NCBI GenBank assembly: GCA_030390025.1
Contig: JASTWF010000069.1
Span: forward strand, 310,001-374,000
Origin: Squalus acanthias
Lineage: Eukaryota
Reading direction: 5' to 3'
Length of the DNA: 64,000 nt
Of the stretch, positions 17,793 to 53,772 are shown piece by piece (the stretch's first letter is position 1; the number at the start of each line of letters is the position of its first letter). The notes beneath the pieces are model-generated. The model searched no databases, was not told where the DNA came from, and saw nothing but the letters and a program-made list of their open reading frames with translations. A program made the position numbers and the translations under genes.

Positions 17793-18041
17793 ATTGTACT
17801 GGAAAACCGGCTAATATAACATTGAAGGAATGTGTGACTGAGAGTCAGAAGCCAATCCTGAAACGTGGAATAAAACACGTGATTTGCAATAGTTTAAATT
17901 GCACAGAGAGTTACGCTGCAAGTTTTAACAGCAGTGGCTGTTACAACTTTTACATCCGGAACATTTCAGCGGAAGATATTGTTCAATGGTGGCTCGAATA
18001 CGGGTCCTCCGAGCCTATTAGTTTCAAATTAGTGTCTGCCG
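17793..18041 (+). CDS. Gene A extracellular exon, atypical Cys-rich Ig-like domain
   Basis: Acceptor TCTCTTTCAG, donor CCG|GTGAGT, 249 nt phase 1-1, open; DCTGKPANITL...FYIRNISAEDIVQWWLEY...FKLVSA; 5 Cys, 4 N-glycosylation sequons. Confidence 0.8.
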
Positions 18042-18299
18042 GTGAGTTTAAAAGAATCTTCGTGCGGTCCTGCTTTGCGCTAAACACTTGTTTTCTCCTG
18101 AACAGGTCTTCACTTTCTTGGCCCGGAAATTGCAGGGAAAATAAGGACGATTTCACGGCCATTAATCAGCTCGCTTAAAAAAAAAACCCCCGGCAATTGT
18201 TGGCGAGGAGGAGATACGGCGTGTGTTCCACTTCTCCCCACATTGCTGGACGATTAGCGTCGCTCCGCCATTAGCCTCGCCAAAATGGAACAAATCACC

Positions 18300-18950
18300 A
18301 AGTTCCCTCCGAGTCACGCACACAACTGTCCCGACTTGGAAATATATCGGCCGTTCCTTCATCGTCGCCGGGTCAATATCCTGGAACTCCCTCCCGAACA
18401 GCACTGTGGAGCACCTTCACCACACGGACTGCAGCGGTTCAAGTCGGCAGCTCACCACCACCTTGGGGAACTTGGAGGTGGTGGTGTTCCCATTCGCCTG
18501 CTGCCCTTGTCCTTCTAGGTGGAAGAGGTCGCGGGTTTGGGAGGTGCTGCCGAAGAAGCCTTGGCGAGTTGCTGCAGTGCATCTTGTAGATGGTGCACAC
18601 TGCAGCCACGGTGCGCTGGTGGTGGAGGGAGTGAATGTTTAAGGTGGTGGATGGGGTGCCGATCAAGCGGGCTGCTTTGTCCTGGATGGTGTCGAGCTTC
18701 TTGAGTGTTGTTGGAGCTACACTCATCCAGGCAAGTGGAGAGTATTCCATCACACTCCTTACTTGTGCCTTGTAGATGGTGGAAAGGCTTTGGGGAATCA
18801 GGAGGTGAGTCACTCGCCACAGAATACCCAGCCTCTGACCTGCTCTTGTTGCCACAGTATTTATGTGACTGGTCCAGTTAAGTTTCTGGTCAATGGTGAC
18901 CCGTAGGGTGTTGATGGTGGGGGATTCGGTGATGGTAATGCCGTTGAAAG
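18300..18950. mobile_element. LINE RT C-terminal fragments (second LINE family)
   Basis: Minus strand IYKAQVRSVMEYSPLAW...KKLDTIQDKAARLI; plus-strand tail piece about 18300-18460. Confidence 0.8.
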
Positions 18951-19304
18951 TAAGATGGGAATCTGAGCTCGGAGGTGATACAATCCATGATCGCTGTTCA
19001 GTCACTATGCGACTGGGGTGACATAGCGAAGGCTGCCTGCTTCCTGTAGATCTGCACCACAGCAGGAGGGGTCACCTAGAATCCCACAGCACAGAAGGAG
19101 GCCACTCGGCCCATCGTGCCTGTGCCGGCTCTTTGAAAGAGCTCTCCAATTAGCCTCACAGCCCCTGGCTCTTTCCCCATAACACTGCAAATTTTTCCCC
19201 TTCAAGTATTTATCCAGGGGAAGGGGGAGAAAATGCGTTGAACAGGAGAAAAATGCAAATATTTTACGAACTGCTCAATTAAATTGTCTGCTTTGCTTTT
19301 CCAG

Positions 19305-19370
19305 ATTGTTCTACCCAAGAACCAAACGAAACTTTTGCAGATCCCGACAAACATTTCAATACAAACCGAG
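19305..19370 (+). CDS. Gene A stalk exon (DCSTQEPNETFADPDKHFNTNR)
   Basis: Acceptor CTTTGCTTTTCCAG, donor GAG|GTAACA, 66 nt phase 1-1. Confidence 0.72.
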
Positions 19371-19609
19371 GTAACACCAGCTCAGATTTAATACTTTTTA
19401 TACAAGGTGTCAGCAGTGATTCAGTGGGTTTAGCTCTCTCTCTCTCTCTCTCTCTCTCGCCTCTGAGTCAGACGGTCGTGGGTTCAAATCCCACTCCAGA
19501 CACTAGGGCACAAATTCCAGGCCCACACTGCCCAGTGCCAGTACTGGGGTGACATAGCGAAGGCTGCCTGCTTCCTGTAGATCTGCACCACGGCAGGAGG
19601 GGTCACCTA

Positions 19610-20060
19610 GAATCCCACAGCACAGCAGGAGGTCACTCGGCCTTGTAACTAAGATCCCTCATCCCCGGAACCTTCACATCCCTCCTAAAGTGTGGTGACC
19701 AGAACTGGACACAATACTCTAGTTGTGGCCTAACCAGTGCTTTATAAAGGTTCAGCATAACTTCTCTACTTTTGTACTCAATACCTCTATTTAAGAAGCC
19801 CAAGATCCTATATGCTTTGCTAACCACTCTCTCAATATGTCCCGCCACCTTCAGGGACCTATGCACATTAACTCCCAGGTCCCTCTGTCCCTGCACATTC
19901 TTTAAAACTGTGCCATTAAGTGTATATTGCCTCTCCCTGTTCCTTCTGCCAAAATGCATCACCTCACACTTCTCTGTATTAAATTCCATCTGCCACTTGT
20001 CTGCCCATTCTGCTAGCCTTTCTATGTCCTGTTGCAGTCGATTGGCATCATCCTCCTTTG
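19610..20060 (-). mobile_element. CR1 LINE fragment
   Basis: WADKWQMEFNTEKCEVMHFG...LVRPQLEYCVQFWSP. Confidence 0.9.
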
Positions 20061-20818
20061 TGAACCAGATGGGTTTTTCCGACAATCCGGCAGTTTCATG
20101 GTCACCATTACTGATACTAGCTTTTTTATTTAACTGAATTTAAATTCCCCAGCTGCCGTGGTGGGATTTGAACTCGTGTCTCATTGGATCAGTTACTCCA
20201 GGCCTCTGGACTTCTAGTCCAGTAACATAACCACGATCCCACCGGTCCTGGGATGGGGGAGCCATGTGACGTAATCATACTCCCAGAATCAACCCTAAAT
20301 CCAGACTCCTCTATCACCATCCCCGGGTACGTCCTGTCCCACCGGCCGGACAGACCCACCAGAGGTGGGAGCTCAGTGGTATACAGTCGGGTGGGAGTGG
20401 CCCCGGGAGTCCTCAACATTGACGACAATGGGGAGTAATATTGGCCCAGCTATGAAACCGGCGTTCCACCCGATCCCAAGACTTCCCCGACCCACAGATT
20501 AGTTTAAAATTCCCCCTCGGTTTCAGCGGGCTGTTGGGTTTAATTGTAGGGAGGCTGCTGCTTGTCAGTCTCCAGTTATCTCTATCGGAAAGCCTGTATC
20601 GATCGCATTGTGGGGCAGTGTGTGTGTGTGTTCAAGGAGCTGTGGGCTGGCCTGGTGTGTGTGTTTATTGGAATCTAACCTCTCCCATCGCTCCGGGGCT
20701 AGAATTGACCAGGGATCTATTTGTGCTGGGGATGGTTCTGAAGCACTCGGTGCTGAAGGTCTCTGCTGTTAGTTTTGTGAGTGTGTCCCGGTCTGTTAAC
20801 GGTTTATTCTGTCTCTAG

Positions 20819-20924
20819 ATCCTGGACTCTCTACTGGAGCAGCAGTTGGATTGGGAATCGGAATTCCTACTCTTCTTACTCTTGCTGTTTTCATTGGGGT
20901 TTTCCTGATCCGAAAGCGATGGTG
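20819..20924 (+). CDS. Gene A transmembrane exon (cassette copy 1)
   Basis: Acceptor TGTCTCTAG, donor GTG|GTGAGT; DPGLSTGAAVGLGIGIPTLLTLAVFIGVFLIRKRW, phase 1 to 2. Confidence 0.85.
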
Positions 20925-22191
20925 GTGAGTTCTAGAATGTGCCGCAGTTTCCATTGTTGATTCTAGTTTTGTTCTATTACACTTTGTGTTTAAAGATGTT
21001 GTGTGCAGCGATACACTTTGAGCTGTGTGCGATGCTTCAATGTAGCATTATCCCATCACTTCCAGCTTGTTGTCATCTCTGTTGCTCCGTTCACTAGCCA
21101 CCGACTCCATCCCTCTCCCTGGCCACTGTCTGAGGCTGAACCAGTTCACAACCTCGGTGTCTTATTAGACCCTGAGCTGAGCTTCCGACCCGTATCCTCC
21201 CCATCACCAAGACCGCCTACTTCCACCTCCGTAACATCGCCCGTCTCCGCCCCTACCTCAGCTCATCTGCTGCTGAAACCCTCATCCATGCCTTACCGCA
21301 AAACTCGACCATTTCAAAACTCTCCTTTCTGTATCCTAACTCACACCAAGTCCCGTTCACCCATCACCCTCTGTGTTCACTGACCTACATTCATCCTCCT
21401 GTTCAAATCCCTCCGTGGCCTCCTCCAGCCCCACAACCCTCTGAGATCTCTGCACTCCTCCAATTCTGGCCTCTTGAGCATCCCTGATTTCCATCGCTCC
21501 ACCATTGGCGGCCGTGCCTTCAGCTGCCTGGAAGCTCTGGAAGTCCCTCCATAAACCTCTCCGCCTCTCTGTCCTCCTTTAAGACTCTCCTTAAAACTGA
21601 CCTCTTTGACCAAGTTTTTGGTCTCCTGCCCTAATATCTCCTTATGTGGCTTGCTGTCAAATTTTGTTTGATTGCCACTGTGAAGCACCTTGGGCGATAA
21701 AGGCGCTATATAAATTCAAGCTGTTGCTCTATCTCCACTCGTGCTTACATTTTTCAAACCACCCCCTTGACCCGGCCATCAGTGATTCCGATCACTGAGA
21801 AGGCCATCCTGGATTTCCTCGTCTCCCTCAACATCCACATCTCCCTGCCCACCTCTTACCCCCCACTTCCCCCTTTGCCCCCCGATGGGGAGAAGGAACT
21901 ATTGCTGGGATCTCTAACTCTTCTCTGGTCTTTCCCCGTCACGATATTTCTGCCTCCGTTAGCCTGTTTGGCCACTGCTAGAACAGGCTTGACCACATCA
22001 AGAAATACCATCTCCATCTGTGGCTCTCAGTACTTCAGGATCAGCCTGGAGAGTACGGACATGCCCAACATCCTCCTGTCTGATCTGATCCCCATCATCT
22101 TCAGCTCAGTGTTAACCCAGGTCCTCATCAATTCTTCTTAATCTCCAAAATTGAGGCTAGCTGTCATTTTTCTATTTCTCTGGTGCCTCAG

Positions 22192-22331
22192 GCAGCACGG
22201 GTCCTGTGGAGTGTACAGCTCCTGCCCATTGCCTCCCCTATAAACCTCCTCTCCTCTACACTCTGCTCCATCAACGTGCAGCTCCTGTGACACATTTTCC
22301 AGCTACCAGTGGTGCCCAGGATGTTGTGTAA
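22192..22331 (+). CDS. Gene A candidate cytoplasmic exon with tandem acceptors (22192 / 22196)
   Basis: Pyrimidine tract then CAG|GCAG|C; first acceptor gives WQHGSCGVYSSCPLPPL* (stop 22243), second gives CTGPVEC...LLYTLL...QDVV* (stop 22331). Confidence 0.55.
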
Positions 22332-22627
22332 TTTAATCGGTCTGTGCTCCTGAACGGCTCCTTTACACACTTGTCCAAAGTGTTGGATCCTTTTAACGTA
22401 ACCTGCACTCTGCTGGTTTCTCTCTCCTAGGAACTGTTTGAAAAAGAGACTCCAGCAATCCAGAAGCAGCACCTACTGACGACCCTTTGACAAACGTGCC
22501 TTGTTTGGATGAAGCACGGAGCCTTGTGACAACAGCAGCTGAGCATCAGACTGGAGCGGCTGGAGAACAAAACCTTCTGGGGAACCTGGCTGTCCAGCAC
22601 TGACTGAGTTTATGCTGCACTGTGCCT

Positions 22628-22686
22628 GTATATATTTTATATATATATATTTTTTATATATTTTTTATATATATATATATATATAT
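22628..22686. repeat. (TA)n microsatellite
   Basis: Direct inspection. Confidence 0.9.
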
Positions 22687-23029
22687 TTTGGAATGTCACT
22701 TTTCTATATGTACATTTTGAACCTGTGATTAAAGGGAAGCCCCTGTTTATACGAGTGGATGTACAGTCTTGCTTTGTTTAAGGACCGAAAGCAGAGTAAC
22801 GGTGAACGGTTGTTTTTCAGACTGGAGGGAGGTATACAGTGGTGTCCAAGGGCTTGCTGTTGGGACCACTGCTCTTTTGATGTATATTAATGACCTGGTC
22901 TTGGGTATACAGGGCATCATTTCAAAGTTTGCAGATGACACGGAACTCTGAAATGTAATAAGACAGCGAGATGGGGCAGGAACAGACTTCAGGAGGATCG
23001 AGAGCGAGACAGACTGAATCATAGAATAG

Positions 23030-24215
23030 AATCAGAGAAATTTACAGCACAGAAGGAGGCCATTCGACTCACCGTGTCTGTGCCGGCCGAATGAGCTATC
23101 CAGTCTAATCCCACTTTCCAGCTCTTGGTCCATGGCCCTGTAGGTTACGGCACTTCAAGTGCATATCCAAGTACTTTTTAAATGTGATGAGGGTTTCTGC
23201 CTCTACCACCCTTTCAGGCAGTGAGTTCCAGACCCCCACCACCCTCTGGGTGAAAAAAGTTCTCAACTCCCCTCTAATCCTTCTACCAATTACTTTAAAT
23301 CTCTGCCCCCTGGTTATTGACCTCTCTGCTAGGGGAAATAGGTCCTTCCTATCCACTCTATCTAAGCCCCTCATCATTTTATACACCTCAATTAAGTCTC
23401 CCCTCAGCCTCCTCTGTTCCAAAGAAAACAACCCCAGCCTATCCAATCTTTCCTCATAGCAGAAATTCTCCAGTCCTGGCAACATCCTCGTAAATCTCCT
23501 CTGCCCCTCTCCAGTGCAATCACGTCTTTCCTGTAATGTGGTGACCAGAACTGTACACAGTACTCTAGCTGTGGCCTAACCAGTGTTTTATACAATTCAA
23601 GCATAACCTCCCTGCTCTTATATTCTATGCCTCGGCTAATAAAGGAAAGTATCCCGTATGCCTTCTTAACCACCTTATCTACCTGTCCTGCTACCTTCAG
23701 GGATCTGTGGCCATGCACTCCAAGGAGCCTCTGTTCCTCTGCAAGTCTCAGTATCCTACCATTTATTGTGTATTCCCTTGCCTTGTTAGCCCTCCACAAA
23801 TGCATTACCTCACACTTCTCCAGATTGAATTCCATTTGCCACTTCTCTGCCCACCTGACCAGTCCATTGATATCTTCCTGCAGTCCACAGCTTTCTTCCT
23901 CACTGTCAACCACACGGCCAATTTTTGTATCATCTGCAAAATTCTTAATCATGTCCCCTACATTGAAGTCTAAATCATTGATATATACCACAAAAAGCAA
24001 GGGACCTAGTACGGAACCCCACTGGAAACAGCCTTCCAGTCACAAAAACAGCCGTCGGCCATTACCCTTTGTTTCCTGCCACTGAGCCAATTTTGGATCC
24101 AACTTGCCAATTTCCCGTGGATCCCATGGGCTTTTACTTTTCTGCTCAGACTGTCATGTGGGACCTTGTTAAAAGCCTTGCTGAAATCTATGTAGACAAC
24201 ATCAAACAGACAATC
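23030..24215 (-). mobile_element. CR1 LINE (RT to 3' tail); inverted paralog at 42945-44130
   Basis: IDFSKAF, FADDTKI, YKTLVRPQLEYC motifs. Confidence 0.92.
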
Positions 24216-24221
24216 CTGTGG

Positions 24222-24790
24222 GCGGGGGGCAGTACTGAGAGAGCGCCGCACTGTCGGAGGGGCAGTACTGAGGGAGCGCCGCACTGTCGGGGGGGAGTAC
24301 TGAGGGAGTGCCACACTGTCGGAGGGGCAGTACTGAGGGAGTGCCGCACTGTCGGGGGGCAGTACTGACGGAGCGCCGCACTGTCGGGGGGCAGTACTGA
24401 GGGAGTGCCGCACTGTCGGAGGGGCAGTACTGAGGGAGCGCCGTACTGTCGGAGGGGCAGGACTGAGGGAGCGCCGCACTGTCGGAGGGGCAGTACTGAG
24501 GGAGCGCCACACTGTCGGAGGGGCAGTACTGAGGGAGCGCCGCACTGTCGGGGGGCAGTACTGAGGGAGTGCCGCATTGTCGGAGGGGCAGTACTGAGGG
24601 AGCGCCGCACTGTCGGAGGGGCAGGACTGAGGGAGCGCCGCACTATCGGAGGGGCAGTACTGAGGGAGCGCCGCACTGTCGGGGGGCAGTACTGAGGGAG
24701 CGCCGCACTGTCGGAGGGGCAGTACTGAGGGAGCGCCGCACTGTCGGCGGGGCAGTACTGAGGGAGCGCCGCATTGTCGGAGGGGCAGTT
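24222..24790. repeat. 33-bp minisatellite (reverse orientation)
   Basis: GGGGCAGTACTGAGGGAGCGCCGCACTGTCGGA units. Confidence 0.95.
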
Positions 24791-26070
24791 TTTTACAGAG
24801 TTTAAACCGAGACCCCGTCTGCCCTCTCAGGTGGATGTAAAAGATCCCACGGCCACTATTGGAAGAAGAGCAGGGGGGAGTTCTCCCCCGTGTCCTGGGA
24901 CCAATATTTATCCCTCAATCAACATCACTAAAACAGATTATCTGGTCATTATCACATTGCTGTTTGTGGGAGCTTGCTGTGCACAAAGTGGGTGCTGCGT
25001 TTCCTACATTACAACAGTGATCACACTTCAAAAAAGGTACTTCATTGGCTGTGAAGCGCTTTGGGACGTCCTGAGGTGGTGAAAGGCGCTGGAGAAATGC
25101 GAGTCTTTCTTTAATGTTGCTCCATGGTGTCCCTGCAATACCTCCCTTTGTCCACCGGGTGGTGCTGGTGCTCTGTTTACCATTGGCCCGTTGAGCTGGA
25201 CAACACCGCCATCTCCTGGCTGAGCACCATTAATACAGGAACCAAAACAACAACAACAACTTCCATTTATATAGTGCCTTTAACGCAGTAAAACGTCCCA
25301 AGGTGCTGTACAGGAGCAATTATCAAACAAATTTTGACACCGAGCCACATAAGGAGATATTAGGACAGGTGACCAAAAACTTGGTTAAAGAGGTAGGTTT
25401 TAAGGAGCGTCTTAAAGATGAGGAGAGAGGCGGAGAGGTTTAGGGAGGGAATTCCAGAGCTTGGGGCCCAGGCAGCTGAAGACACGGCCACCAATGGTGT
25501 AGCGATTAAAATCGGGGGATGCGCAAGAGGCCAGAATTGGAGGAGAGCAGAGATCTCGGAGGGTCAGAATCATAGAATGGTGACAGCACAGAAGGAGGCC
25601 ATTCGGCCTGTTGAGCCCGTGCCGGCTCTCTGCAAGAGCACTTCAGCCAGTCCCACTCCCCCGCCCTTTCCCCACAGCCCTGCAAAATTTGTTTCCTTCA
25701 GGTACTTATCCAATTCCCTTTTGAAAGCCACGGTTGAATCTGCCTCCACCACCATTTCAGGCAGAACATTCCAGATCCTCACCACTCGCTGCGTAAAAAA
25801 GATTTCCCCCATGTCACCTTTGGTTCTTCTACCAATCACCTTAAATCTGTGTCCTCTGGTTATTGACCCTCCCACCAATGGGAACAGTTTCTCTCTATCT
25901 GCTCTGTCCAGACTCCTCATGATTTTGAACACCTCTATCAAATCTCCTCTCAACCTTCTCTGCTCCAAGGAGAACAACCCCAGCTTCTCCAGTTTATCCA
26001 CATAACTGAAGTCCCTCATCCCTGGAACCATTCTCGTAAATCTCCTCCGCACCCTCTCCAAGGCCTTGAC
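24790..26070 (-). repeat. Inverted segmental copy of about 1490-4560 without its insertions
   Basis: 25105-25260 is the reverse complement of the unique stretch 2270-2420, with the same flanking SINE/L2/CR1 order. Confidence 0.85.
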
Positions 26071-26940
26071 ATTCTTTCTTTCAATTAGTAATCTCACTCT
26101 GAGGAGGTTGCACCGATGAAGGATGCTTCGGTTTGTGTGTCTGTATTTGTGTGTGACAGTATTGGTAGCAGTGACCACCGCACAGTCCTTGTTGAGACCA
26201 AGTCCCGTCTTCACACTGAGGACACCCTCCATCGTGTTGTGTGGCACTACCACCGTGCTAAATGGGATAGATTCAGAACAGATCTAGCGGCTCAAAACTG
26301 GGCATCCATGAGGATCTACGATACTAAGTCTTTCTTTAATATCGAACATAGAGATTATTAGGAGCCACACACTGAGATCAGGGCAAGCCTCGACATGATG
26401 TTGCCTCAGTTTTGTTTTCAGGGACATAATATGCATTAATTATCGTAACAATAGAGTGAGACTGTTCTCTGTACAGAAGAGATTACATCGTGAAACTTTC
26501 ATAGAAATTTACAGCACAGAAGGAGGCCATTCGACTCACCGTGTCTGTGCCAGCCGAATGAGCTATCCAGTCTAATCCCACTTTCCAGCTCTTGGTCCAT
26601 GGCCCTGTAGGTTACGGCAATTCAAGTGCATATCCAAGTACTTTTTAAATGCGATGAGGGTTTCTGCCTCTACCACCCTTTCAGGCAGTGAGTTCCAGAC
26701 CCCCACCACCCTCTGGGTGAAAAAAGTTCTCAACTCCCCTCTAATCCTTCCACCAATTACTTTAAATCACCACAGGCGGATGTAGGTTATTGGAATCTGA
26801 CCTCTCCCATCGCTCCGGGGCTAGAATTGACCAGGGATCTATTTGTGCTGGGGATGGTTCTGAAGCACTCGGTGCTGAAGGTCTCTGCTGTTAGTTTTGT
26901 GAGTGTGTCCCGGTCTGTTAATGGTTTATTCTGTCTCAAG

Positions 26941-27043
26941 ATCCTGGACTCTCTACTGGAGCAGCAGTTGGATTGGGAATCGGAATTCTTACTCTTCTTA
27001 CTCTTGCTGTCATTGGGGATTTCCTGATCCGAAAGCGACGGTG
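26941..27043 (+). CDS. Second TM exon copy (alternative or pseudo-exon)
   Basis: Acceptor TCTCAAG, donor GTGAGT; DPGLSTGAAVGLGIGILTLLTLAVIGDFLIRKRR. Confidence 0.55.
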
Positions 27044-28318
27044 GTGAGTTCTACAATGTGCCACAGTTTCCATTGTTGATTCTAGTTTTGTTCTATTACA
27101 CTTTGTGTTTAAAGATGTTGTGTGCAGCGATACACTTTGAGCTGTGTGCGATGCTTCAATGTAGCATTATCCCGTCACTTCCAGCTTGTTGTCATCTCTG
27201 TTGCTCCGTTCACTAGCCACCGGCTCCATCCCTCTCCCTGGCCACTGTCTGAGGCTGAACCAGTTCACAACCTCGGTGTCTTATTAGACCCTGAGCTGAG
27301 CTTCCGACCCGTATCCTCCCCATCACCAAGACCGCCTACTTCCACCTCCGTAACATCGCCCGTCTCCGCCCCTACCTCAGCTCATCTGCTGCTGAAACCC
27401 TCATCCATGCCTTACCGCAAAACTCGACCATTTCAAAACTCTCCATTTTGTATCCTAACTCTCACCAAGTCCCGTTCACCCATCACCCTCTGTGTTCACT
27501 GACCTACATTCATCCTCCTGTTCAAATCCCTCCGTGGCCTCCTCCAGCCCCACAACCCTCCGAGATCTCTGCATTCCTCCAGTTCTGGCCTCTTGAGCAT
27601 CCCTGATTTCCATCGCTCCACCACTGGCGGCCGTGCCTTCAGCTGCCTGGACCCTAAGCTCTGGAAGTCCCTCCATAAACCTCTCCGCCTCTCTGTCCTC
27701 CTTTAAGACTCTCCTTAAAACCTACCTCTTTGAGCAAGCTTTTGGTCGCATGTCCTAATATCTCCTTATGTGGCTCGCTGTCAAATTTTGTTTGATAATG
27801 CCACTGTGAAGCACCTTGGGCGATAAAGGCGCTATATAAATTCAAGCTGTTGCTCTATCTCCACTTGTGCTTACATTTTTCAAACCACCCCCTTGACCCG
27901 GCCATCAGTGATTCCGATCACTGAGAAGGCCATCCTGGATTTCCTTGTCTCCCTCAACATCCACATCTCCCTGCCCACCTCTTACCCCCCACTTTCCCCC
28001 TTTGCCCCCCGATGGGGAGAAGGAACTATTGCTGGGATCTCTAACTCTTCTCTGGCCCTTCCCCGTCACGATATTTCTGCCTCCGTTAGCCTGTTTGGCC
28101 ACTGCTAGAACAGGCTTGACCACATCAAGGAATACCATCTCCATCTGTGGCTCTCAGTACTTCAGGATCAGCCTGGAGAGTACGGACATGCCCAACATCC
28201 TCCTGTCTGATCTGATCCCCATCATCTTCAGCTCAGTGTTAACCCAGGTCCTCATCAATTCTTCTTAATCTCCAAAATTGAGGCTAGCTGTCATTTTTCT
28301 ATTTCTCTGGTTCCTCAG

Positions 28319-28458
28319 GCAGCACGGGTCCTGTGGAGTGTACAGCTCCTGCCCATTGCCTCCCCTATAAACCTCCTCTCCTCTACACTCTGCTCCATCA
28401 ACGTGCAGCTCCTGTGACACATTTTCCAGCTACCAGTGGTGCCCAGGATGTTGTGTAA
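28319..28458 (+). CDS. Second cytoplasmic exon copy
   Basis: Identical by eye to 22192-22331, including CAGGCAG. Confidence 0.45.
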
Positions 28459-29367
28459 TTTAATCGGTCTGTGCTCCTGAACGGCTCCTTTACACACTTG
28501 TCCAAAGTGTTGGATCCTTTGAACGTAACCTGCAGCCTGCTGGTTTCTCTCCTAGGAAACAAAATAGAGACTCCAGCAATCCAGAAGTAGCACCTACTGA
28601 CGACCCTATGACAAATGTGCCTTGTTCGGATGAAGCACGGGGCCTTGTGACAACAGCAGCTGAGCATCAGACTGGAGCGGCTGGAGAACAAATCATTCTG
28701 GGGAACCTGGCTGTCCAGCACTGACTGAATTTACGCTGCACTGTGCCTGGGTCAGGGAGGGACCGACCAGCCCGGTATTGTAGTTATCATAGAATCAGAG
28801 AATAGCACAGCACAGGAGGAGGCCATTCTATCCAGTGACTCCTGGAAGTGTTACCCCTTTACTGAAAACTGTCCAATCAGTAGTTCATTCTATTCTATAT
28901 CTCAGTATTACTGTGTCCAGGACCACCTTTAGCTCTGTAACCCACTGATCTGACTCTGAGATGTTGCCATATCAATGAGCAGGAATATCAGCTACATTCT
29001 GATTAATCACCTCTATTCAATCTCCCCGTAACCTTCTCTGCTCTAAGGAGAACAACCCCAGCTTCTCCAGTCTCTCCACATAACTTTACCGTTCTGGTAA
29101 ATCTCCTCCGCTCCCTCTCCAAGGCCTTGAGATCCTTCCTAAAGTGTGTGATGCCCTGAATTGCACACAATACTCCAGCTGGGGCCTAACCAGTGGTTTA
29201 TAAAGGTTATAGCAATAACTTCCTTGCTTTTGTATTCAATAACTGTATTTATAAACCCACGGACCTGTATCTCTCCACTAGCCTTTAACTTGAGAACCTT
29301 GGGCTCCCAAATCTCTTCACTCTACAGTTCCTCATCTCACTGTTTTATACACACAATTCATATTCTA

Positions 29368-42932: not shown

Positions 42933-42934
42933 CA

Positions 42935-46645: not shown

Positions 46646-47028
46646 CTTCTTACAAAAAAAAAACTGTCCGATTGGTATTACACAATCTACTGGATGTAAA
46701 AGCAGTGGAACGAATGAGTAGCCACATTTTTGAAATAATATTTACTGTGTCCAAGCTCAGTCAGCGCTGGACAGCCAGATTCCCCAGAAGGTTTTGTTTT
46801 CCAGCCGCTCCATTCTGATGCTCAGCTGCTGTTGTCACAGGGCCCCGTGCTTCATCCGAACAAGGCACGTTTGTCAAAGGGCCGCCATTAGATGCTGCTT
46901 CTGGATTGCTGGAGTCTCTATTTTGTTTCCTAGGAGAGAGAAACCAGCAGAGTGCAGGTTACGTTAAAAGGATCCAACACTTTGGACAAGTGTGTAAAGG
47001 AGCCGTTCAGGAGCACAGACCGATTAAA

Positions 47029-47168
47029 TTACACAACATCCTGGGCACCACTGGTAGCTGGAAAATGTGTCACAGGAGCTGCACATTGATGGAGCAGAGT
47101 GTAGAGGAGAGGAGGTTTATAGGGGAGGCAATGGGCAGGAGCTGTACACTCCACAGGACCCGTGCTGC
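47029..47168 (-). other. Third copy of the cytoplasmic exon (untranslated in gene B if the TM stop is used)
   Basis: Reverse complement of 22192-22331 with one visible change. Confidence 0.6.
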
Positions 47169-47235
47169 CTGAGGCACCAGAGAAATAGAAAAATGACAGC
47201 CAGCCTCAATTTTGGAGATTAAGGAGAATTGATGA

Positions 47236-48482
47236 GAACATAAGAAATAGGATCAGGAGTCGGCCATTCCACCCCTCGAGCCTGCCCCACCATTCAATAA
47301 GATCATGGCTGAACTGATCTAGGCCGCAACGCCACTTTCCCGCCCGCTCCCCATAACCCTTGACTCCCCTGTAGCTGAAATATCTGTCTATCTCCACCTT
47401 GAATATATTCAATGACCCAGCCTCCACAGCTCTCTGGGGTAGAGAATTCCAAAGATTCACGACCCTCAGAAGAAATTCCTCCTCATCTCCGTTTTAAATG
47501 GGCGACCCCTTATCCGGAAACTGTGTCCTCAAATTCTAGATAGCCCCATGAGGGGAAAAATCCTCTTTGCATCTTCCCGGTCGAGCCCCCTCAGAATCTT
47601 ATGTTTCAATAAGATCACCTCTCATTCTTCTAAACTCCAATGAGTATAGACCCAACCTGCTCAACCTTTCTTCATAAGACAACCCCTTCATCCCAGGAAT
47701 CAACCTAGTGAACCTTCTCTGAACTGCCTCCAATGCAAGTATATCCCTATCCCTCCTTAAATAAGGAGACCAAAACTGTACGCAGTACTCCAGGTGTGGT
47801 CTCACCAGCGCCCTGTACAGTTGTAGCAAGACTTCCCTACTTTTATACTCCATCCCCCTTGCAATAAAGGCCAACATTCCATTTGCCTTCCTAATTACTT
47901 GCTGTACCTGCATGCTAACTTTGTGTTTCATGTATGAGGACCTCCAGATCCCTCTGTACCGCAGCATTATGTAGTCTCTCTCCATTTAAATAATAATTTG
48001 CTTTTTTATTTTTCCTACCAAAGTGGATAACCTCACATTTTCCCACATTATACTCCATCTGCCAAATTTTTGCCCACTTAACCTATCCATATCCCTTTGC
48101 AGACTCTGTGTCCTCCTCACAACTTGTGTTCCCACCTATCTTTGTATCATCAGCAAATTTGGCTACATTACACACGGTCCCTTCATCCAAGTCATTAATA
48201 TAGGTTGTAAATATTTGAGGCCCCAGCACTGATCCCTGTGGCACCCCACTAGTTACAGTTTGCCAACCAGAAAATGACCCATTTATCCCAACTCTCTCTT
48301 TTCTGTTAGTTAGCCAATCCTCTATCCATGCTAATATATTACCCCCAACCCCGTGAGCTCTTATCTTGTGCAGTAACCTTTTATGTGGCACCTTATCGAA
48401 TACCTTCTGGAAATCCAAATACACTACATCTACTGGTTCGCCTTTATCCACCCTGCTCGTTACATCAAAGAACTCTAGTAAA
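47236..48482 (-). mobile_element. CR1 LINE insertion specific to cassette copy 3
   Basis: YLDFQKVFDKVPH, SGVPQGSVLGP, FADDTK; absent from copies 1 and 2. Confidence 0.9.
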
Positions 48483-49675
48483 TGAGTAAAAGATGATGGG
48501 GATCAGATCAGACAGGAGGATGTTGGGCATGTCCGTACTCTCCAGGCTGATCCTGAAGTACTGAGAGCCACAGATGGAGATGGTATTTCTTGATGTGGTC
48601 AAGCCTGTTCTAGCAGTGGCCAAACAGGCTAACGGAGGCAGAAATATCGTGACGGGGAAAGACCAGAGAAGAGTTAGAGATCCCAGCAATAGTTCCTTCT
48701 CCCCACCGGGGGGCAAAGGGGGAAGTGGGGGGTAAGAGGTGGGCAGGGAGAGGTGGATGTTGAGGGAGACAAGGAAATCCAGGATGGCCTTCTCAGTGAT
48801 CGGAATCACTGATGGCCGGGTCAAGGGGGTGGTTTGAAAAATTTAAGCACAAGTGGAGATAGAGCAACAACCTGAATTTATATAGCGCCTTTATCGCCCA
48901 AGGTGCTTCACAGTGGCATTATCAAACAAAATTTGACAGCGAGCCACATAAGGAGATATTAGGGCAGGTGACCAAAAGCTGGGTCAAAGAGGTCAGTTTT
49001 AAGGAGCGTCTTAAAAGGAGAGAGAGAGGCGGAGAGGTTTAAGGAGGGAATTCCAGAGCTTAGGGTCCAGGCAGCTGAAGGCACGGCCGCCAATGGTGGA
49101 GCGATGGAAATCAGGGATGCTCAAGAGGCCAGAATTGGAGGAGTGCAGAGATCTCGAGGGTTGTGGGGCTGGAGGAGGCCACGGAGGGATTTGAACAGGA
49201 GGATGAATGTAGGTCAGTGAACACAGAGGGTGATGGGTGAACGGGACTTGGTGTGAGTTAGGATACAGAAAGGAGAGTTTTGAAATGGTCGAGTTTTGCG
49301 GTAAGGCATGGATGAGGGTTTCAGCAGCAGATGAGCTGAGGTAGGGGCGGAGACGGGCGATGTTACGGAGGTGGAAGTAGGCGCTCTTGGTGATGGAGGA
49401 TATGGGTCGGAAGCTCAGCTCAGGGTCTAATAAGACACCGAGGTTGTGAACTGGTTCAGCCTCAGACAGTGGCCAGGGAGAGGGATGGAGTCGGTGGCTA
49501 GTGAACGGAGCAACAGAGATGACAACAAGCTGGAAGTGACGGGATAATGCTACATTGAAGCATCGCACACAGCTCAAAGTGTATCGCTGCACACAACATC
49601 TTCAAACACAAAGTGTAATCGAACAAAACTAGAATCAACAATGGAAACTGCGGCACATTCTAGAACTCACCACCA

Positions 49676-49767
49676 TCACTTTCGGATCAGGAAAACCCCA
49701 ATGACAGCAAGAGTAAGAGGAGCAAGAATTCCGATTCCCAATCCGACTGCTGCTCCAGTAGAGAGTC
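49676..49767 (-). CDS. Gene B transmembrane exon ending in a stop (GLSTGAAVGLGIGILAPLTLAVIGVFLIRK*)
   Basis: Paralogous acceptor TAG reads TCG; an in-frame CAG lies 6 nt downstream; CGA codon reads TGA. Confidence 0.6.
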
Positions 49768-50844
49768 CTGGATCGAGAGACAGAATAAACCGTTAACAGA
49801 CCGGGACACACTCACAAAACTAACAGCAGAGACCTTCAGCACCGAGTGCTTCAGAACCATCCCCAGCACAAATAGATCCCTGGTCAATTCTAGCCCCGGA
49901 GCGATGGGAGAGGTTAGATTCCAATAAACACACACACCAGGCCAGCCCACAGCTCCTTGAACACACACACACTGCCCCACAATGTGATCGATACAGGCTT
50001 TCCGATAGAGATAACTGGAGACTGACAAGCAGCAGCCTCCCTACAATTAAACCCAACAGCCCGCTGAAACAGAGGGGGGATTTTAAACTAATCTGTGGGT
50101 CGGGGAAGTCTTGGGATCGGGTGGAATGCCGGTTTCACACCCGGCTCAATATTACTCCCCATTGTCGTCAATGTTGAGGACTCCCGGGGCCACTCCCACC
50201 CGACTGTATACCACTGAGCCCCCACCTCTGGTGGGTCTGTCCTTCCGGTGGGACAGGACGTACCCGGGGATGGTGATAGAGGAGTCTGGGATGTAGGGTT
50301 GATTCTGGGAGTATGACCATGTCACACAGCTCTCCCAACTTGGGCACCAGTCCCCAGATGTTAGTGAGGAGGACTTTGCAGGGTTGACTGGGCTGGGTTT
50401 GCCTTTCCTGTGTCCTGGTTCAATGCCTGGCTCGTCCAATTTAATTCTTGTTTATCTTTCTAGTGGTTTGATAGAAACTGATTGACTTGCTGGGCCACAG
50501 AGGGCCGTGAAAAGTCAACCACGTTGGTGTGGGACTGGAGTCACCTATAGACCAGACCGGGTAAGGACGGCAGGTTTCCTTCCCTAAAGGACATCAGTGA
50601 ACCAGTTGGGTTTGACGACAATCCAACAGCTTCAGGGTCACTTCTATTGATACCAACTTTTTATTTCCAGATTTATTCTCAAATTCTCAAAGTGCCATGG
50701 TGGGATTTGAACTCACCTTCTCTGGATTATGAGCCCAGGCCTCTGGATTATTAATCTAGTAACAGAACCCCTGCACTATCGTACCCATAAAATTGGTGAT
50801 AGACTCCTGATCAATGCAGATGCCCTGAAACAGAAACCTCTCAC

Positions 50845-51189
50845 CTGTTACAGAGAGATGGACTGAGACATCTTGCTCCCAATAAAAGCCCACAGCCGTC
50901 CTCCTGAGAATCAGACACTCATACTCGTTCTGGTCGGACTGCCTGAGGTCAGAGAGCAGAACTGACCAGTTGCCGTGTTCCAGTTGATCTTTGAAGAGGT
51001 TTGTTCTGTTTCTGAACCGCGGGTCTTGCTGTGTCAAATCATCGCTCCCATCGACAAACTTGTGGACAACTTCACGCTCGGGTATTTGCCAAACTACTTG
51101 TAAATCTGGGACTGGGGCATTCCCTTTGTAGGTACAGGGCAGCACAACCTGCCCCCCAAGGAACCCGGAAACTGTGACAGGTGAAAAAT
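50845..51189 (-). CDS. Gene B IgV exon 2, B7/butyrophilin-like V-set domain
   Basis: 345 nt phase 1-1, TTTTCCAG / CAG|GTGAGA; VVLPC, VVWQ, QDPRFRNRTNLF, GNWSVLL, DQNEYEC. Confidence 0.9.
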
Positions 51190-51867
51190 CTGGAAAAGAT
51201 TCAAAGTATTTATCCTCAGATATAACCTCCCTGCTGGAACATTACATCCCAAGCTTCACAGAGATACACTGCAAGAAGCTCTGACCAGTAACTCACTGCT
51301 TTCACTGCTGTGGGAAGGCTGAAGCTCAGGCATGTACTATTTACAACAAGCACCATTTATATAGCATCCCGTGTGAGGCAGGCATCATTCTTTTGCCATT
51401 TTTAAATGGAAACATCTCGGCGTCACACTTTGAACCAATGAAATCTCAAAATGCTTTTACAATTGGCTCTTTGCACGGGATCGGGTGGAACGCCGGTTTC
51501 ACACCCGGCCCGATATTACTCTCCGGTGACTTCAACCAGCGTTGCACCCTGTCCCATCAGTTTCCCGACAGGAGGGCTCGGACTTTCCCACAGACTTCCA
51601 CAAACACTAATGCTAGCGGGAAGCGGGAATCCTCAGAGTTCAGCCGCTGAGGGACAGGAAGGCGAGGCTCAGAAGCAGAAATAACAGTTGCAGGTAGTTT
51701 AAGGAGCAGTTCCAGGTAACGGTGACCCACACCACTCACTCTCACAGAATCGTTCTTTGGCAAAATATCAAACAGCATTTCAAACCTTCCAGTGTTACTG
51801 CCCGTCTATCCCGCACGATAGAATGTAAGAGCTGAAAACACATGCAGTAGTTTAGAAACAGACTTAC

Positions 51868-51906
51868 CTGGTGCGGGCGTGTTCGGTACAGGTGAACGGG
51901 CTCGCT
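51868..51906 (-). CDS. Gene B Pro-rich linker exon (ERARSPVPNTPAP)
   Basis: Acceptor GTTTTCTTTAG, donor CAG|GTAAGT, 39 nt phase 1-1. Confidence 0.75.
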
Positions 51907-52589
51907 CTAAAGAAAACATCATGCGTTTAGTATTGTGAAACAAACTGCAGAAATGTTCAAAGACTCTATAGGGCTGCAGGGAAACACATCCAGGGAGGAA
52001 CGAGACTAGGGTGAAACTGATCAGGAAGGATCAGCAACCGGGTCGGCAGAGTGAAAAATCCAACAGGATTGCATGAACTGAGGGGCAGAATGGAAGATTT
52101 CCAGAGTTACCCCGAGCAGTATCGTTCCCAGCAGCCTACATCCGCCTGTGGAGTGCATTCCCACAGGATCCTGGGCCTACTGGGATACACCTTCAAGGTA
52201 AGAGCACTGGGTCTTTTAAAGGCTGCTCCAGAGGTGCTTTGGGCCCGAGCTCCTGCACCCCAACATCTGGAGACAGATGTAGCCCGTTCCTGGTGAGTGA
52301 GTGCAGCTTGAGAGCACCACTGACTCCTTCCATCACCCAGTTTGGCAGCTCTGTCCTTCAGGGCTCAGCCAGCTCGGTCAGTGGTGGTACCGAGCCACCC
52401 TTGGTGATGGACATTGCAGTCTCCCACTCAATACATTCTGTGCCCTTGCTACCCTCAGTGCTTCCTCCAAGTGGTGTTCAACATGGAGGAGTGCTGATTC
52501 ATCAACGGAGGGAGGGCGGTAGGTGGTAATCAGCAGGAGGTTTCCTTACCCATTCTTGACCTGAAGCCGTGAGACTTCATGGGGTTCAG

Positions 52590-53772
52590 AGTCAATGTTG
52601 AGGACTCCCGGGGCCACTCCCACCCGACTGTATACCACTGAGCTCCCACCTCTGGTGGGTCTGTCCTTCCGGTGGGACAGGACATACCCGGGGATGGTGA
52701 TAGAGGAGTCTGGGATGTAGGGTTGATTCTGGGAGTATGACCATGTCACACAGCTCTCCCAACTTGGGCACCAGTCCCCAGTTGTTCGTGAGGAGGACTT
52801 TGCAGGGTCGACTGGGCTGGGTTTGCCTTTGCTGTGTCCTAGTTCGATGCCTGGCTCATTCAGTAAAATTCTTGTGGTTTGATAGAAACTGATTGGCTTG
52901 CTGGGCCACAGAGGGCCGTGAAAAGTCAACCACGTTGCTGTGGGACTGGAGTCACCTATAGACGAGACCGGGTAAGGATGGCAGGTTTCCTTCCCTAAAG
53001 GACATCAGTGAACCAGTTGGGTTTTATGGCAATTCAACAGCTTCATGGTCACTTCTATTGATACCAACTTTTTATTTGCAGATTTAGTCTCAAATTCTCA
53101 AAGTGCCATGGTGGGATTTGAACTCACCTTCTCTGAATTATAAGCCCAGACCTCTGGATTATTAATCTAGCAACAGAACCCCTGCACTATCGTACCCATA
53201 AAATTGCTAACAAACTCCTGATCAATGCAGAAACAGAAACCTCTCACCTGTTACAGAGAGATGGACGAGAACATCTTGCTCCCGATGAAAGCCCTCACCC
53301 GTCCTCCTGAAAATCAGACACTCATACTCGTTATGGTCGGACTCCCTGAGGTCAGAGAGCAGAACTGACCAATTGCCGTGATCCAGTTGATCTTTGAAGA
53401 GGTTTGTTCTGTTTCTGAACCGCGGGTCTTGCTGTGTCAAATCATCGCTCCCATCGACAAACTGGTGGACAACTTCACGCTCGGGTATTTGCCAAAGGAC
53501 TTGTAAATCTGGGACTGGGGCATTCCCTTTGTAGGTACAGGGCAGCACAACCTGCTCCCCAAGGAACCCGGAAACTGTGACAGGCAAAGAACCTGGAAAA
53601 GATTCAAAGTATTTATCCTCAGATATAACCTCCCTGCTGGAACGTTACATCCCAAGCTTCACAGGGATACACTGCAAGAAGCTCTGACCAGTAACTCACT
53701 GCTTTCACTGCTGTGGGAAGGCTGAAGCTCAGGCATGTACTATTTACAACAAGCACCATTTATATAGCATCC
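52590..53772. repeat. Tandem duplicate unit carrying the IgV exon (paralog about 50167-51368)
   Basis: Exon and flanking intron LINE pieces near-identical. Confidence 0.92.
53248..53592 (-). CDS. Gene B IgV exon 1, B7/butyrophilin-like V-set domain
   Basis: 345 nt phase 1-1; canonical B-strand Cys, C-strand Trp, D-x-x-x-Y-x-C. Confidence 0.9.

What the first reader, a model, noticed from the sequence alone, without database searches (positions are those of the whole stretch)
17793..53592. One TM/tail cassette wired to two unrelated ectodomains on opposite strands
Seen: about 20255-22620 (+) and about 46760-50330 (-) are near-identical inverted copies carrying the TM and tail exons. Upstream of one is the atypical Cys-rich domain plus stalk; upstream of the other is B7-like V-linker-V. 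Homology begins inside a LINE-endonuclease fragment that is longer in the intron behind each V exon and cut at about 20255 in gene A. Inference: recent exon shuffling created a chimeric receptor, probably by copying the cassette from the B7-like gene. The pair could act as a signalling form plus a tail-less form.
Basis: partly seen in the sequence, partly recalled or inferred. Interest (0 to 1): 0.85.

Follow-up and report, generated by a model that had tools for sequence, protein, structure and literature searches.

The report
Shared membrane-anchor cassette in shark receptor cluster
Three near-identical copies of a membrane-anchor-plus-tail gene segment sit in a shark immune-type receptor cluster behind two different outer domains, but this pairing is an old, shark-wide design that is repeatedly re-copied rather than a newly made chimera.

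Summary
They are A 20254-22628 (+), B 26787-28749 (+) and C 50337-46753 (-). They are about 96.5% identical, introns included.

- **Cassette content.** Each copy carries a TM exon and a terminal tail exon. Both are homologous to the TM and tail of a large shark B7-like V-set family.
- **Upstream exons.** Upstream of A lie a phase 1-1 Cys-rich exon (17793-18041) and a stalk exon (19307-19372). Upstream of C lie V, linker and V exons.
- **Age of the combination.** Recent exon shuffling as the origin is not supported. Five of the ten Cys-rich-domain proteins I looked up, from five other shark species, already carry this same TM/tail. One whale-shark model carries the Cys-rich and V domains together.
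- **Recurrent process.** On a TM/tail tree the cassettes group by species, not by ectodomain. That means repeated re-copying or homogenisation of the 3' module.
- **Cys-rich domain.** It has no Pfam family and is predicted to be a compact Ig-like sandwich.
- **RNA.** Contigs show the TM exon spliced directly to the terminal exon. The proposed ITIM exon is unsupported.
- **Tails.** C has a stop just after the TM. A's conserved tail is out of frame. Only the orphan copy B is intact.

Earlier scan notes cover this same window.

The parts
17793..18041 (+). Gene A, Cys-rich Ig-like domain exon (249 nt, phase 1-1)
   Evidence: Acceptor ...ctctttcag| and donor G|GTGAGT read directly. 16 of 16 Cys-rich-family proteins hit it by tblastn, best E 4.3e-19. 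phmmer found 15 proteins at E<=1e-3. One RNA contig of run X1 is laid on exactly 17790-18040 at 96%. AF2 model with a 13-row alignment: pLDDT 88.8, seven strands.
19307..19372 (+). Gene A, stalk exon (66 nt, phase 1-1), DCSTQEPNETFADPDKHFNTNR
   Evidence: Splice sites read directly. Weak but colinear tblastn match to the stalk of P0048 (E 0.096). The motif C-[PS]-T-x-x-P aligns with the stalks. Depth 26.8 in X1 only, in bin 19273-19469.
20254..22628 (+). Cassette copy A (intron, TM exon, intron, tail exon)
20819..20924 (+). TM exon of copy A (phase 1 in, phase 2 out), DPGLSTGAAVGLGIGIPTLLTLAVFIGVFLIRKRW
   Evidence: 36 hit rows from the 43 V-family queries. GT..AG joint to 22431 in RNA contigs.
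22431..22603 (+). Terminal tail exon of copy A. The conserved frame (22442-22600) is out of register with the splice, because A has 4 extra nt relative to B and C. The spliced frame ends at a TGA at 22477-22479.
   Evidence: Joint 20923/4 to 22430/1, ends GT..AG, X1 depth 129.
26787..28749 (+). Cassette copy B, an orphan. No V or Cys-rich exon was found between 22.7 and 26.8 kb.
26941..27043 (+). TM exon of copy B (open frame; Asp in ...AVIGDFLI...)
28556..28724 (+). Tail exon of copy B, in frame with its TM exon: KQNRDSSNPEVAPTDDPMTNVPCSDEARGLVTTAAEHQTGAAGEQIILGNLAVQH*
46753..50337 (-). Cassette copy C, with a 1254-nt reverse-transcriptase insertion at 47237-48489
49671..49773 (-). TM exon of copy C. 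The acceptor AG is changed to CG, with a new in-phase AG 6 nt downstream (exon then starts at 49767). CGA is changed to a TGA stop at 49678-49676.
46761..46929 (-). Tail exon of copy C. The frame is open but lies behind the stop in the TM exon.
   Evidence: The C-specific base at the position equivalent to A 22551 is seen in RNA contigs of all 4 runs.
53248..53592 (-). Gene B, V exon 1 (345 nt, phase 1-1)
   Evidence: Pfam V-set E 4e-9.. Splice sites read.
51868..51906 (-). Gene B, linker exon (39 nt, phase 1-1), (E)RARSPVPNTPAP(G)
50845..51189 (-). Gene B, V exon 2 (345 nt, phase 1-1)
   Evidence: Pfam V-set E 6.3e-9. 43 homologues. Splice sites read.
50167..50451 (-). Fragment behind V2 in which the A/C homology starts. 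A twin lies behind V1 at about 52591-53004. In A only 20254-20423 is kept.
   Evidence: Its identity as a LINE endonuclease is not confirmed.

Best explanation
The window is part of a shark multigene cluster of type I membrane proteins built on one chassis. All ectodomain exons are phase 1-1. They are followed by a TM exon and one terminal tail exon. The ectodomain slot holds a B7-like V-set exon, a compact Cys-rich Ig-like exon plus stalk, or both.

Gene A (+) reads Cys-rich, stalk, TM, tail. Gene B (-) reads V, linker, V, TM, tail. A third TM/tail cassette (B) is an orphan.

The three cassettes are about 96.5% identical, introns included. The 3' part of a V-type gene was recently duplicated or recombined into these positions by segmental duplication, non-allelic recombination or gene conversion. 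The left breakpoint in A lies at 20254, at the edge of a SINE-like repeat.

This is one instance of a recurring process. In each shark lineage examined, the TM/tail of Cys-rich-type genes is nearest to that of V-type genes of the same lineage. The pairing of the two ectodomains with one TM/tail is therefore ancient, and only the present copies are young.

Shown: the copies, the exons and their phases, the homologues, the TM-to-tail splice, and the lineage-wise clustering. Inferred: the mechanism and direction of copying, and that the Cys-rich exon is spliced to cassette A in this particular locus.

Since copying, the cassettes have decayed or diversified. C stops after the TM, A's conserved tail is frameshifted, and B is intact.
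For: - Copies and their identity.
- The TM and tail exons are homologous to the V-family TM and tail. 43 proteins at E<=1e-3 among 55 candidates. Sequences. tblastn gives 36 hit rows (from the 43 queries) at each of the three TM exons.
- The Cys-rich exon has good splice sites and phase 1-1.
- phmmer against 1.84 billion representatives gave 15 hits at E<=1e-3. All 10 that I looked up are shark proteins. 5 of those 10 (P0044, P0045, P0048, P0050, P0056) end in this same TM/tail. P0045 holds the Cys-rich domain, stalk, V, TM and tail.
- P0056 (chiPu_0017517) lies on the same 473-kb contig as the V-type chiPu_0017518 and chiPu_0017520.
- TM/tail tree of 31 rows: Scyliorhinus Cys-rich with V, support 99/99. 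Rhincodon 96/98. Cetorhinus 84/89. The window's A, B and C, 100/100. The Cys-rich/V label needs 5 changes on the tree. Holding the Cys-rich-type cassettes as one clade costs 193 lnL, p-AU 4e-64.
- RNA contigs: a GT..AG joint from 20924 to 22431, and paralogue-type joints at the same exon pair in all 4 runs.
- The fragment is native to the V units. V2-unit against V1-unit is 169 of 171 identical there, and the fragment continues upstream. A has only the truncated part, at 160 of 170.
Against: - No RNA contig was shown that joins the Cys-rich or stalk exon to TM exon A. The only contig on the Cys-rich exon comes from one of the four runs and is 96% identical, so it comes from a paralogue or an allele.
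- The runs' RNA label is a guess by the tool.
- No leader exon for either gene was found in the window.
- Branch lengths among A, B and C are not clock-like: 12, 32 and 45 unique sites. A simple one-step duplication history therefore does not fit.
- The AU test group was named after the tree had been seen.
- Other species' proteins are automatic gene models, and a model can merge neighbouring genes.
Confidence: 0.7

Rival explanations
1. A recent exon-shuffling event created a new chimeric receptor for the first time, by copying the TM/tail cassette of the B7-like gene behind an unrelated Cys-rich ectodomain.
For: The cassettes are near-identical, introns included. The homology is cut inside a fragment that is longer behind the V exons.
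Against: Cys-rich + this TM/tail is present in 5 of the 10 looked-up homologues, from five other shark species. The stalk, TM and tail order of gene A is colinear with those proteins. The Cys-rich/V label changes 5 times on the TM/tail tree.
Confidence: 0.08
2. Gene A descends from a composite Cys-rich, stalk, V, TM, tail gene like the Rhincodon model. An inverted segmental duplication copied a V, fragment, TM, tail unit. Gene A then lost its V exon through a deletion or repeat-associated rearrangement ending at 20254. No transfer between genes took place.
For: A composite model exists (P0045). A's intron keeps exactly the piece that lies just downstream of V exons. The sequence upstream of 20254 is made of repeats with very high contig depth.
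Against: No V-exon remnant was found between 19373 and 20253. The composite is a single automatic model. The present sequence is equally well explained by recombination between a Cys-rich gene and a V gene.
Confidence: 0.25
3. The members seen here are decaying products of birth-and-death evolution, that is, pseudogenes or gene pieces, and not a working pair. C is stopped, A is frameshifted, and B has no ectodomain.
For: The stop in C and the frameshift in A. B is an orphan. This copy of the Cys-rich exon was not seen in 3 of 4 runs, and only a 96% relative was seen in the fourth.
Against: Truncated-tail forms are expressed. There is an A-type joint at depth 129 in X1. A 'W-N-stop' type joint has depth 57-128 in 3 runs. 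Short-tail or tail-less models exist in other sharks (for example P0007, P0017, P0032). The stop in C lies 5-7 nt before the TM exon's 3' end, and by recalled rule a stop less than about 50 nt before the last junction escapes nonsense-mediated decay. The exons vary three times more than the introns, which plain decay does not give.
Confidence: 0.35
4. Assembly artefact. The inverted and direct copies are haplotypes or collapsed repeats that were wrongly placed in a satellite-rich region.
For: The region is full of 33-nt satellite arrays, palindromes and repeats. The window's two ends are a 98% direct duplicate of each other.
Against: The copies differ by about 3.5% and by private indels. They also differ by a 1254-nt insertion, by different flanks and by different coding defects. 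A-type and C-type variants are both seen in one run (places 20869 and 22551). Allelic variants cannot be excluded from that alone.
Confidence: 0.07

Closest known systems
Unnamed shark V-set family, annotated as 'CD276 antigen homolog', 'myelin-oligodendrocyte glycoprotein-like', 'sodium channel subunit beta-4-like' or 'VTCN1-like' (for example Mustelus P0004, Heterodontus P0003, Scyliorhinus P0042)
   Same: The same B7-like V domain (59-77% identity to V exon 2). The same short Pro-rich linker exon. The same TM (…GLSTGA.VGLGIGI…). The same tail ending …TTAPEHQDGAAGEQNLLGNGAVQH.
   Different: Most models have one V, whereas gene B has V, linker, V. The only other such model is the Pristiophorus model P0001. 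The window's TMs read GAAVG where most others read GARVG.
Uncharacterised shark proteins with the Cys-rich domain: XP_060708628.1 (Hemiscyllium), XP_038670882.1 (Scyliorhinus canicula), XP_078394435.1 (Cetorhinus), XP_048476625.1 (Rhincodon), GCC17306.1 (Chiloscyllium punctatum)
   Same: The Cys-rich domain (33-57% identity), the stalk beginning D..C-P-T, and then the same TM/tail as the V family.
   Different: Gene A's tail exon is frameshifted. Other family members (P0049, P0051, P0053) carry a different TM/tail. The domain has no Pfam family.
Chicken BG genes (butyrophilin relatives), PMC4046983. I read the abstract and passages found with 'hybrid', 'gene conversion' and 'cytoplasmic tail'.
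   Same: A B7-superfamily V, TM, tail multigene cluster. [quoted passage not shown] The 5' and 3' gene parts have different histories.
   Different: BG genes all have a V ectodomain and long coiled-coil tails built of many exons. Here the swapped or kept module is a two-exon TM/tail, and the ectodomain alternates between two different domain types.
Paired activating/inhibitory receptor families (KIR, LILR, SIRP and similar). Recalled, not tested by any search.
   Same: Clustered Ig-type receptors whose members differ in tail length, with truncated-tail members next to long-tail ones.
   Different: The conserved tail has no ITIM or ITAM. No basic residue lies in the TM core of A or C. The ITIM exon proposed by the scan is not supported.

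Membership tests
B7/butyrophilin-like V-set proteins | An N-terminal V-set Ig domain | tested here: met
   Pfam PF07686, E 6.3e-9 and 4e-9, above the cut-off of 26 bits. Sources name the relatives CD276-like, BTN1A1-like and VTCN1-like.
B7/butyrophilin-like V-set proteins | A membrane-proximal IgC domain after the V (the canonical V-C layout; recalled) | tested here: not met
   No C-type exon lies between the V exons and the TM exon. tblastn with 43 V-type and 16 Cys-rich-type homologues finds only V, linker, TM and tail. The homologues themselves are V-TM.
Shark V / Cys-rich receptor family sharing one TM/tail (unnamed) | A TM exon of the type …GLSTGA.VGLGIGI…, entered in phase 1 | tested here: met
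   Three copies, each with 36 hit rows from the 43 V-family queries. Sequences.
Shark V / Cys-rich receptor family sharing one TM/tail (unnamed) | A terminal exon ending …TTAxEHQxGAAGEQNLLGNxAVQH, in frame with the TM exon | tested here: inconclusive
   The exon is present in all three copies. It is in frame in B. In C it is in frame but lies behind a stop. In A it is out of frame.
Shark Cys-rich domain family | The conserved pattern C..P.L…IC….C…Y…(F/Y)N.SGCY…I…LE.G, followed by a stalk | tested here: met
   Invariant L22, C31, C36 and I54. Nearly invariant C13, P20, Y40, N45, L67, E68 and G70, in a 13-row alignment. phmmer best E 3.4e-14.
Ig-like fold (for the Cys-rich domain) | A seven-strand beta sandwich that superposes on solved Ig domains | tested here: met
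   The model has pLDDT 88.8 and seven strands. In VIA-align the 50 listed rows have Z 8.1-9.0 and rmsd 2.2-2.8 over 73-82 of 82 residues. By their titles they are Ig V/I-type domains or complexes or fusions that hold one. The best Foldseek E is only 5.6e-3. The tool notes that a best Z of 7-8 is common, so this is a fold assignment, not homology.
Inhibitory (ITIM) receptors | A cytoplasmic exon carrying (I/V/L/S)xYxx(I/V/L) that is spliced into the mRNA | tested here: not met
   The listed joints go from the TM exon straight to 22431 or nearby. None enters 22170-22331, though 32 joints were not shown. Contigs run unspliced across 21749-22437. No homologue holds that peptide.
LINE apurinic-type endonuclease (for the breakpoint fragment) | A match to an endonuclease/exonuclease/phosphatase profile, or to LINE ORF2 proteins | tested here: not met
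   No Pfam family at E<=0.1. The only hit at E<=10 is DOG1 (E 0.33), which is not an endonuclease family. There is no relevant PDB sequence. 15 candidates were scored and none reached E<=0.001. The resemblance to endonuclease N-terminal motifs is recalled only.

The most novel reading that the evidence does not exclude
Sharks hold a so far undescribed receptor system in which one leader/TM/tail chassis is kept homogenised, lineage after lineage, across genes with two different binding domains. These are a B7-like V domain and a compact Cys-rich Ig-like domain without the usual F-strand cysteine. Both domain types therefore always feed the same membrane-proximal machinery. Within a cluster the TM and tail exons change faster than their introns and repeatedly produce tail-less forms. 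That would point to selection on signalling output, for example decoy against signalling forms under pathogen pressure, rather than to plain decay.
Probability: 0.3. Interest if true: 0.65.

Novelty: new variant of a known kind. Interest (0 to 1): 0.5.

Why it matters
Clusters of immune-type receptors are known to evolve by duplication, hybrid genes and tail loss. This locus adds a cartilaginous-fish case with several unusual points:

- The exchanged unit is a two-exon TM/tail module.
- The module is shared by two structurally different ectodomains.
- One of those ectodomains is a domain family without a name or Pfam model.
- The family is large in every shark genome that gave hits, and its members are labelled only by misleading automatic names.

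If the lineage-wise homogenisation of the 3' module is real, the family is a good natural system for asking why signalling modules are kept uniform while binding modules diversify. It is not a case of a newly born chimeric gene.

Tried and rejected
- **Homologue search with the Cys-rich ORF.** A word-indexed search with the 197-aa ORF, scoring residues 58-170, found nothing: 9 candidates, none at E<=0.01. I nearly read this as 'no such gene'. The exhaustive phmmer search then found the family.
- **Single-sequence AF2 model of the Cys-rich exon.** It gave a low-confidence alpha/beta model (pLDDT 67.4). I discarded it in favour of the model built with an alignment.
- **ORF length as evidence.** I rejected it for the Cys-rich exon. 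By my own estimate a stop-free stretch of about 143 codons outside the repeat is not rare in 64 kb.
- **Leader exons.** Pattern searches for leader and linker motifs of the family found only the linker at 51875-51892. A search for Leu runs gave nothing convincing. The 5' ends of both genes remain unknown. The scan's proposed start of gene A near 12091 was read but could not be tested.
- **Naming the breakpoint fragment as a LINE endonuclease.** This failed in Pfam, PDB and the homologue search.
- **ESM Atlas.** It gave only weak Ig/V-set-flavoured neighbours.
- **Literature.** Five searches and passages of PMC10751288 turned up no description of this family. Supplements were closed, and gene-family tables of shark genome papers may list it.
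- **Three-copy history.** A simple clock-like history was rejected. Unique sites are 12, 32 and 45, and about 10 of C's lie beside the insertion and may be alignment noise.

Full report
**What is there**

A self-comparison of the window shows three copies of a segment of about 2-2.4 kb, not two.
- A is 20254-22628 (+).
- B is 26787-28749 (+).
- C is 50337-46753 (-).
- A against C is 96.55% identical over 1857 columns and 95.29% over a further 488. In C the two blocks are split by a 1254-nt insertion (47237-48489) that encodes a reverse-transcriptase piece (RVT_1, E 1.7e-16).
- A against B is 96.76% over 1972 columns. B against C is 96.60% over 1443.
- The inverted homology resumes beyond a (TA)n tract: 22689-24788 matches 44461-42364 at 94.8%.
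- The window has no N.
- The surroundings are repeat-rich. There are 33-nt satellite arrays in both orientations, RT fragments and a palindrome near 40.2 kb. The window's own ends are a direct 98% duplicate: 1-1416 matches 56502-57928, and 5613-8367 matches 60659-63408.

**Exons of the cassette**

The three-way alignment and translations give the TM exon.
- In A it is 20819-20924, with acceptor AG at 20817-18 and donor GTGAGT from 20925. It is entered in phase 1 and left in phase 2. It reads DPGLSTGAAVGLGIGIPTLLTLAVFIGVFLIRKRW.
- tblastn with the 43 V-family proteins gives 36 hit rows at each of the three TM exons. It also hits a terminal exon in all three copies, with best E from 1.2e-15 to 6.4e-17.
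- The terminal exon is A 22431-22603, B 28556-28724 and C 46929-46761. It ends …VTTAAEHQTGAAGEQNLLGNLAVQH and is plainly homologous to the family tail …TTAPEHQDGAAGEQNLLGNGAVQH.

**RNA evidence**

I laid the contigs of four public runs on 17500-23400. These were X1 and X3 of one coded organism and X5 and X6 of another. The tool only guesses that they are RNA.
- A joint with GT..AG ends skips 1506 nt and runs from the TM exon to the terminal exon (X1, depth 129).
- Further joints link the same exon pair with a few different letters at the start of the terminal exon: AACTGA in X3, X5 and X6; AAACA in X1; AAACAAAGT in X3. These are transcripts of close paralogues or alleles.
- Spliced RNA is therefore present, and the TM exon joins the terminal exon directly.
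- No listed joint enters 22170-22331, the 'ITIM exon' of another scan note. Contigs run unspliced through it (21749-22437 in X1, 21698-22424 in X3). No homologue contains its peptide. However, 32 joints were not shown by the tool.

**State of the three cassettes**

- In C the TM-exon acceptor AG has become CG, and a new in-phase AG lies 6 nt downstream. CGA has become TGA right after …FLIRK (49678-49676). A protein from gene B would therefore end just inside the membrane.
- A has 4 extra nt at the start of the terminal exon relative to B and C. With the RNA-supported splice the frame reads WNCLKKRLQQSRSSTY and stops at 22477-22479. The conserved tail is in another frame.
- B is open in both exons, with an Asp in its TM. 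No V or Cys-rich exon lies upstream of it.
- The AACTGA-type transcripts would read W-N-stop. Other sharks have short-tail models (P0007, P0017, P0032). Tail loss may be a regular feature of the family.

**The two ectodomains**

- *Gene B (-).* V exon 1 is 53592-53248, the linker is 51906-51868 and V exon 2 is 51189-50845. All are phase 1-1. Both V ORFs pass Pfam V-set.
- The 43 relatives are all shark proteins, with names such as CD276 homolog, MOG-like, VTCN1-like and sodium channel beta-4-like. The best is a Pristiophorus model at 77% identity.
- *Gene A (+).* The Cys-rich exon 17793-18041 has a strong acceptor and donor and is phase 1-1. The stalk exon 19307-19372 is also phase 1-1.
- Pfam finds nothing in the Cys-rich ORF, and the indexed search found nothing.
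- The exhaustive phmmer search found 15 proteins at E<=1e-3. Three are long repeat proteins that I take for chance (P0046, P0055, P0058). Two were not looked up (P0053, P0057). The other ten are all shark proteins labelled uncharacterised or hypothetical.
- In run X1 a single 631-nt contig lies on 17790-18040, which are the exon's limits. It has 10 mismatches, and the rest of the contig lies elsewhere. The other three runs have zero depth there.
- A close paralogue of the exon is therefore expressed and spliced. This copy itself is not shown to be.
- With a 13-row alignment AF2 gives pLDDT 88.8 and seven strands.
- Foldseek has no match at E<=0.001. Its best rows (E from 5.6e-3) are Ig V/I domains.
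- In VIA-align the 50 listed rows have Z 8.1-9.0. They are Ig V/I-type domains or entries that contain one, among them CD58 and CD48.
- I read the domain as a compact Ig-like sandwich with unusual cysteines. This is a fold call, not proof of homology. The two ectodomains are unrelated in sequence but not in fold class.

**Is the chimera new? No.**

- Five of the ten looked-up Cys-rich proteins end in this very TM/tail. They come from Hemiscyllium XP_060708628.1, Scyliorhinus XP_038670882.1, Cetorhinus XP_078394435.1, Chiloscyllium punctatum GCC17306.1 and Rhincodon XP_048476625.1.
- The Hemiscyllium model also starts with the V family's leader and linker.
- The Rhincodon model carries the Cys-rich domain, stalk, V, TM and tail in one chain.
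- The Chiloscyllium gene sits on the same 473-kb contig as two V-type genes with neighbouring tag numbers.
- Gene A's exon order is colinear with these proteins.
- The architecture therefore predates the split of these shark orders, while the A/B/C copies differ by only about 3.5%.

**A recurring process**

I built a tree of the TM/tail parts of 28 database proteins plus the three tail exons of the window. It has 31 rows and 90 columns.
- Each Cys-rich-type cassette sits next to V-type cassettes of its own lineage. Scyliorhinus has support 99/99. Rhincodon has 96/98. Cetorhinus has 84/89. The hemiscylliids have 81/81. The window's A, B and C have 100/100.
- The Cys-rich/V label needs 5 changes on the tree.
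- Forcing the six Cys-rich-type cassettes together costs 193 log-likelihood units, p-AU 4e-64. The caveat is that I named the group after seeing the tree.
- I left out proteins without a full tail. Two V-type rows have long branches.
- Two processes give this pattern, and I cannot separate them. One is repeated homogenisation or re-copying of the 3' module between the two gene types. The other is repeated birth of Cys-rich-only and V-only genes from composite Cys-rich + V genes by exon loss.

**Direction of the local event**

- The A/C homology starts at A 20254, next to a SINE-like repeat with very high contig depth.
- In gene B the same fragment runs on upstream behind V2, and again behind V1.
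- In the shared 171 nt the two V units are 169 of 171 identical to each other, while A is 160 of 170 identical to either.
- The fragment is therefore at home in V units, and A holds a truncated copy. It equally fits a lost V exon in gene A.
- The label 'LINE endonuclease' is unconfirmed.

**Odd rates**

- Among A, B and C, variable sites make up 3.7% of the TM-tail intron (56 of 1501).
- They make up 7.8% of the TM exon (8 of 103) and 11.7% of the tail exon (20 of 171).
- Tail exon against intron gives Fisher p 3.5e-5. TM exon against intron gives p 0.06. Both exons against all non-coding columns give p 1.3e-5.
- The changes come in runs.
- Plain decay cannot exceed the intron rate. This points to patchy conversion from other paralogues or to selection on the tail.

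**Literature**

Five full-text searches found no description of this family. Passages of the cartilaginous-fish MHC paper PMC10751288 do not mention it. The nearest described parallel I found is the chicken BG cluster, with 'many hybrid genes' (PMC4046983, abstract and passages). Supplements were closed.

**Verdict**

A shared module, the likely direction of copying and a tail-less C all hold.
- It is wrong on the main point, that a new chimeric receptor arose by recent exon shuffling.
- What is there is a member of a shark-wide modular receptor family caught after a recent re-copying of its 3' module. It includes an undescribed Ig-like domain.
- The joined spliced models were deliberately not built or searched.

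Noticed in passing
window 1-8367 and 56502-63408: The two ends of the window are a direct duplicate at about 98%. 1-1416 matches 56502-57928, 4553-5612 matches 59564-60625, and 5613-8367 matches 60659-63408. The whole unit of about 56.5 kb may therefore be tandemly repeated. That could be the source of the 96% paralogue of the Cys-rich exon seen in RNA.
   Followed up: no
window 20665-22611 (three-way alignment of copies A, B and C): The exons vary more than the introns. The tail exon has 20 of 171 variable sites and the TM exon 8 of 103, against 56 of 1501 in the intron (Fisher p 3.5e-5 for the tail exon). The changes are clustered in runs.
   Followed up: partly
window 50167-51369 against 52591-53772: The two V units are a mosaic. 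They are 99.2% identical just upstream of the V exon and 98.8% in the fragment behind it. They are only 94.4% identical in the V exon itself and 90.4% in a stretch between.
   Followed up: partly
window 33872-35599 (+) and 36508-38289 (+): Two long open frames of 576 and 594 aa lie next to satellite arrays. The first carries a reverse-transcriptase domain (RVT_1, E 4.5e-8). They are probably retroelement copies.
   Followed up: no
window 4391-5160, 13468-14770, 24200-24960, 33090-33500, 36200-36600, 38600-39380, 41520-42940, 58620-60070; also 15801-17018 and 12785-13284: A 33-nt satellite occurs in at least eight arrays in both orientations. There is also a 51-nt array of 19 copies and a perfectly identical 41-nt tandem array.
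   Followed up: no
window 38704-42199, centre near 40240: A near-perfect palindrome. 38704-39572 matches 42199-41329 at 96%. 39744-40123 matches 40354-40733 at 96%, with 230 nt between the arms.
   Followed up: no
window 26941-27043 (TM exon of copy B): The orphan cassette B is the only copy with both exons open and in frame. Its TM carries an Asp (…AVIGDFLI…). It could serve as an alternative 3' end for gene A.
   Followed up: no
window 20819-20850 and the equivalent places in B and C: All three window TMs read STGAAVGLGIGI, where most other sharks' proteins read STGARVGLGIGI. The widely kept Arg before the TM core is lost here.
   Followed up: no
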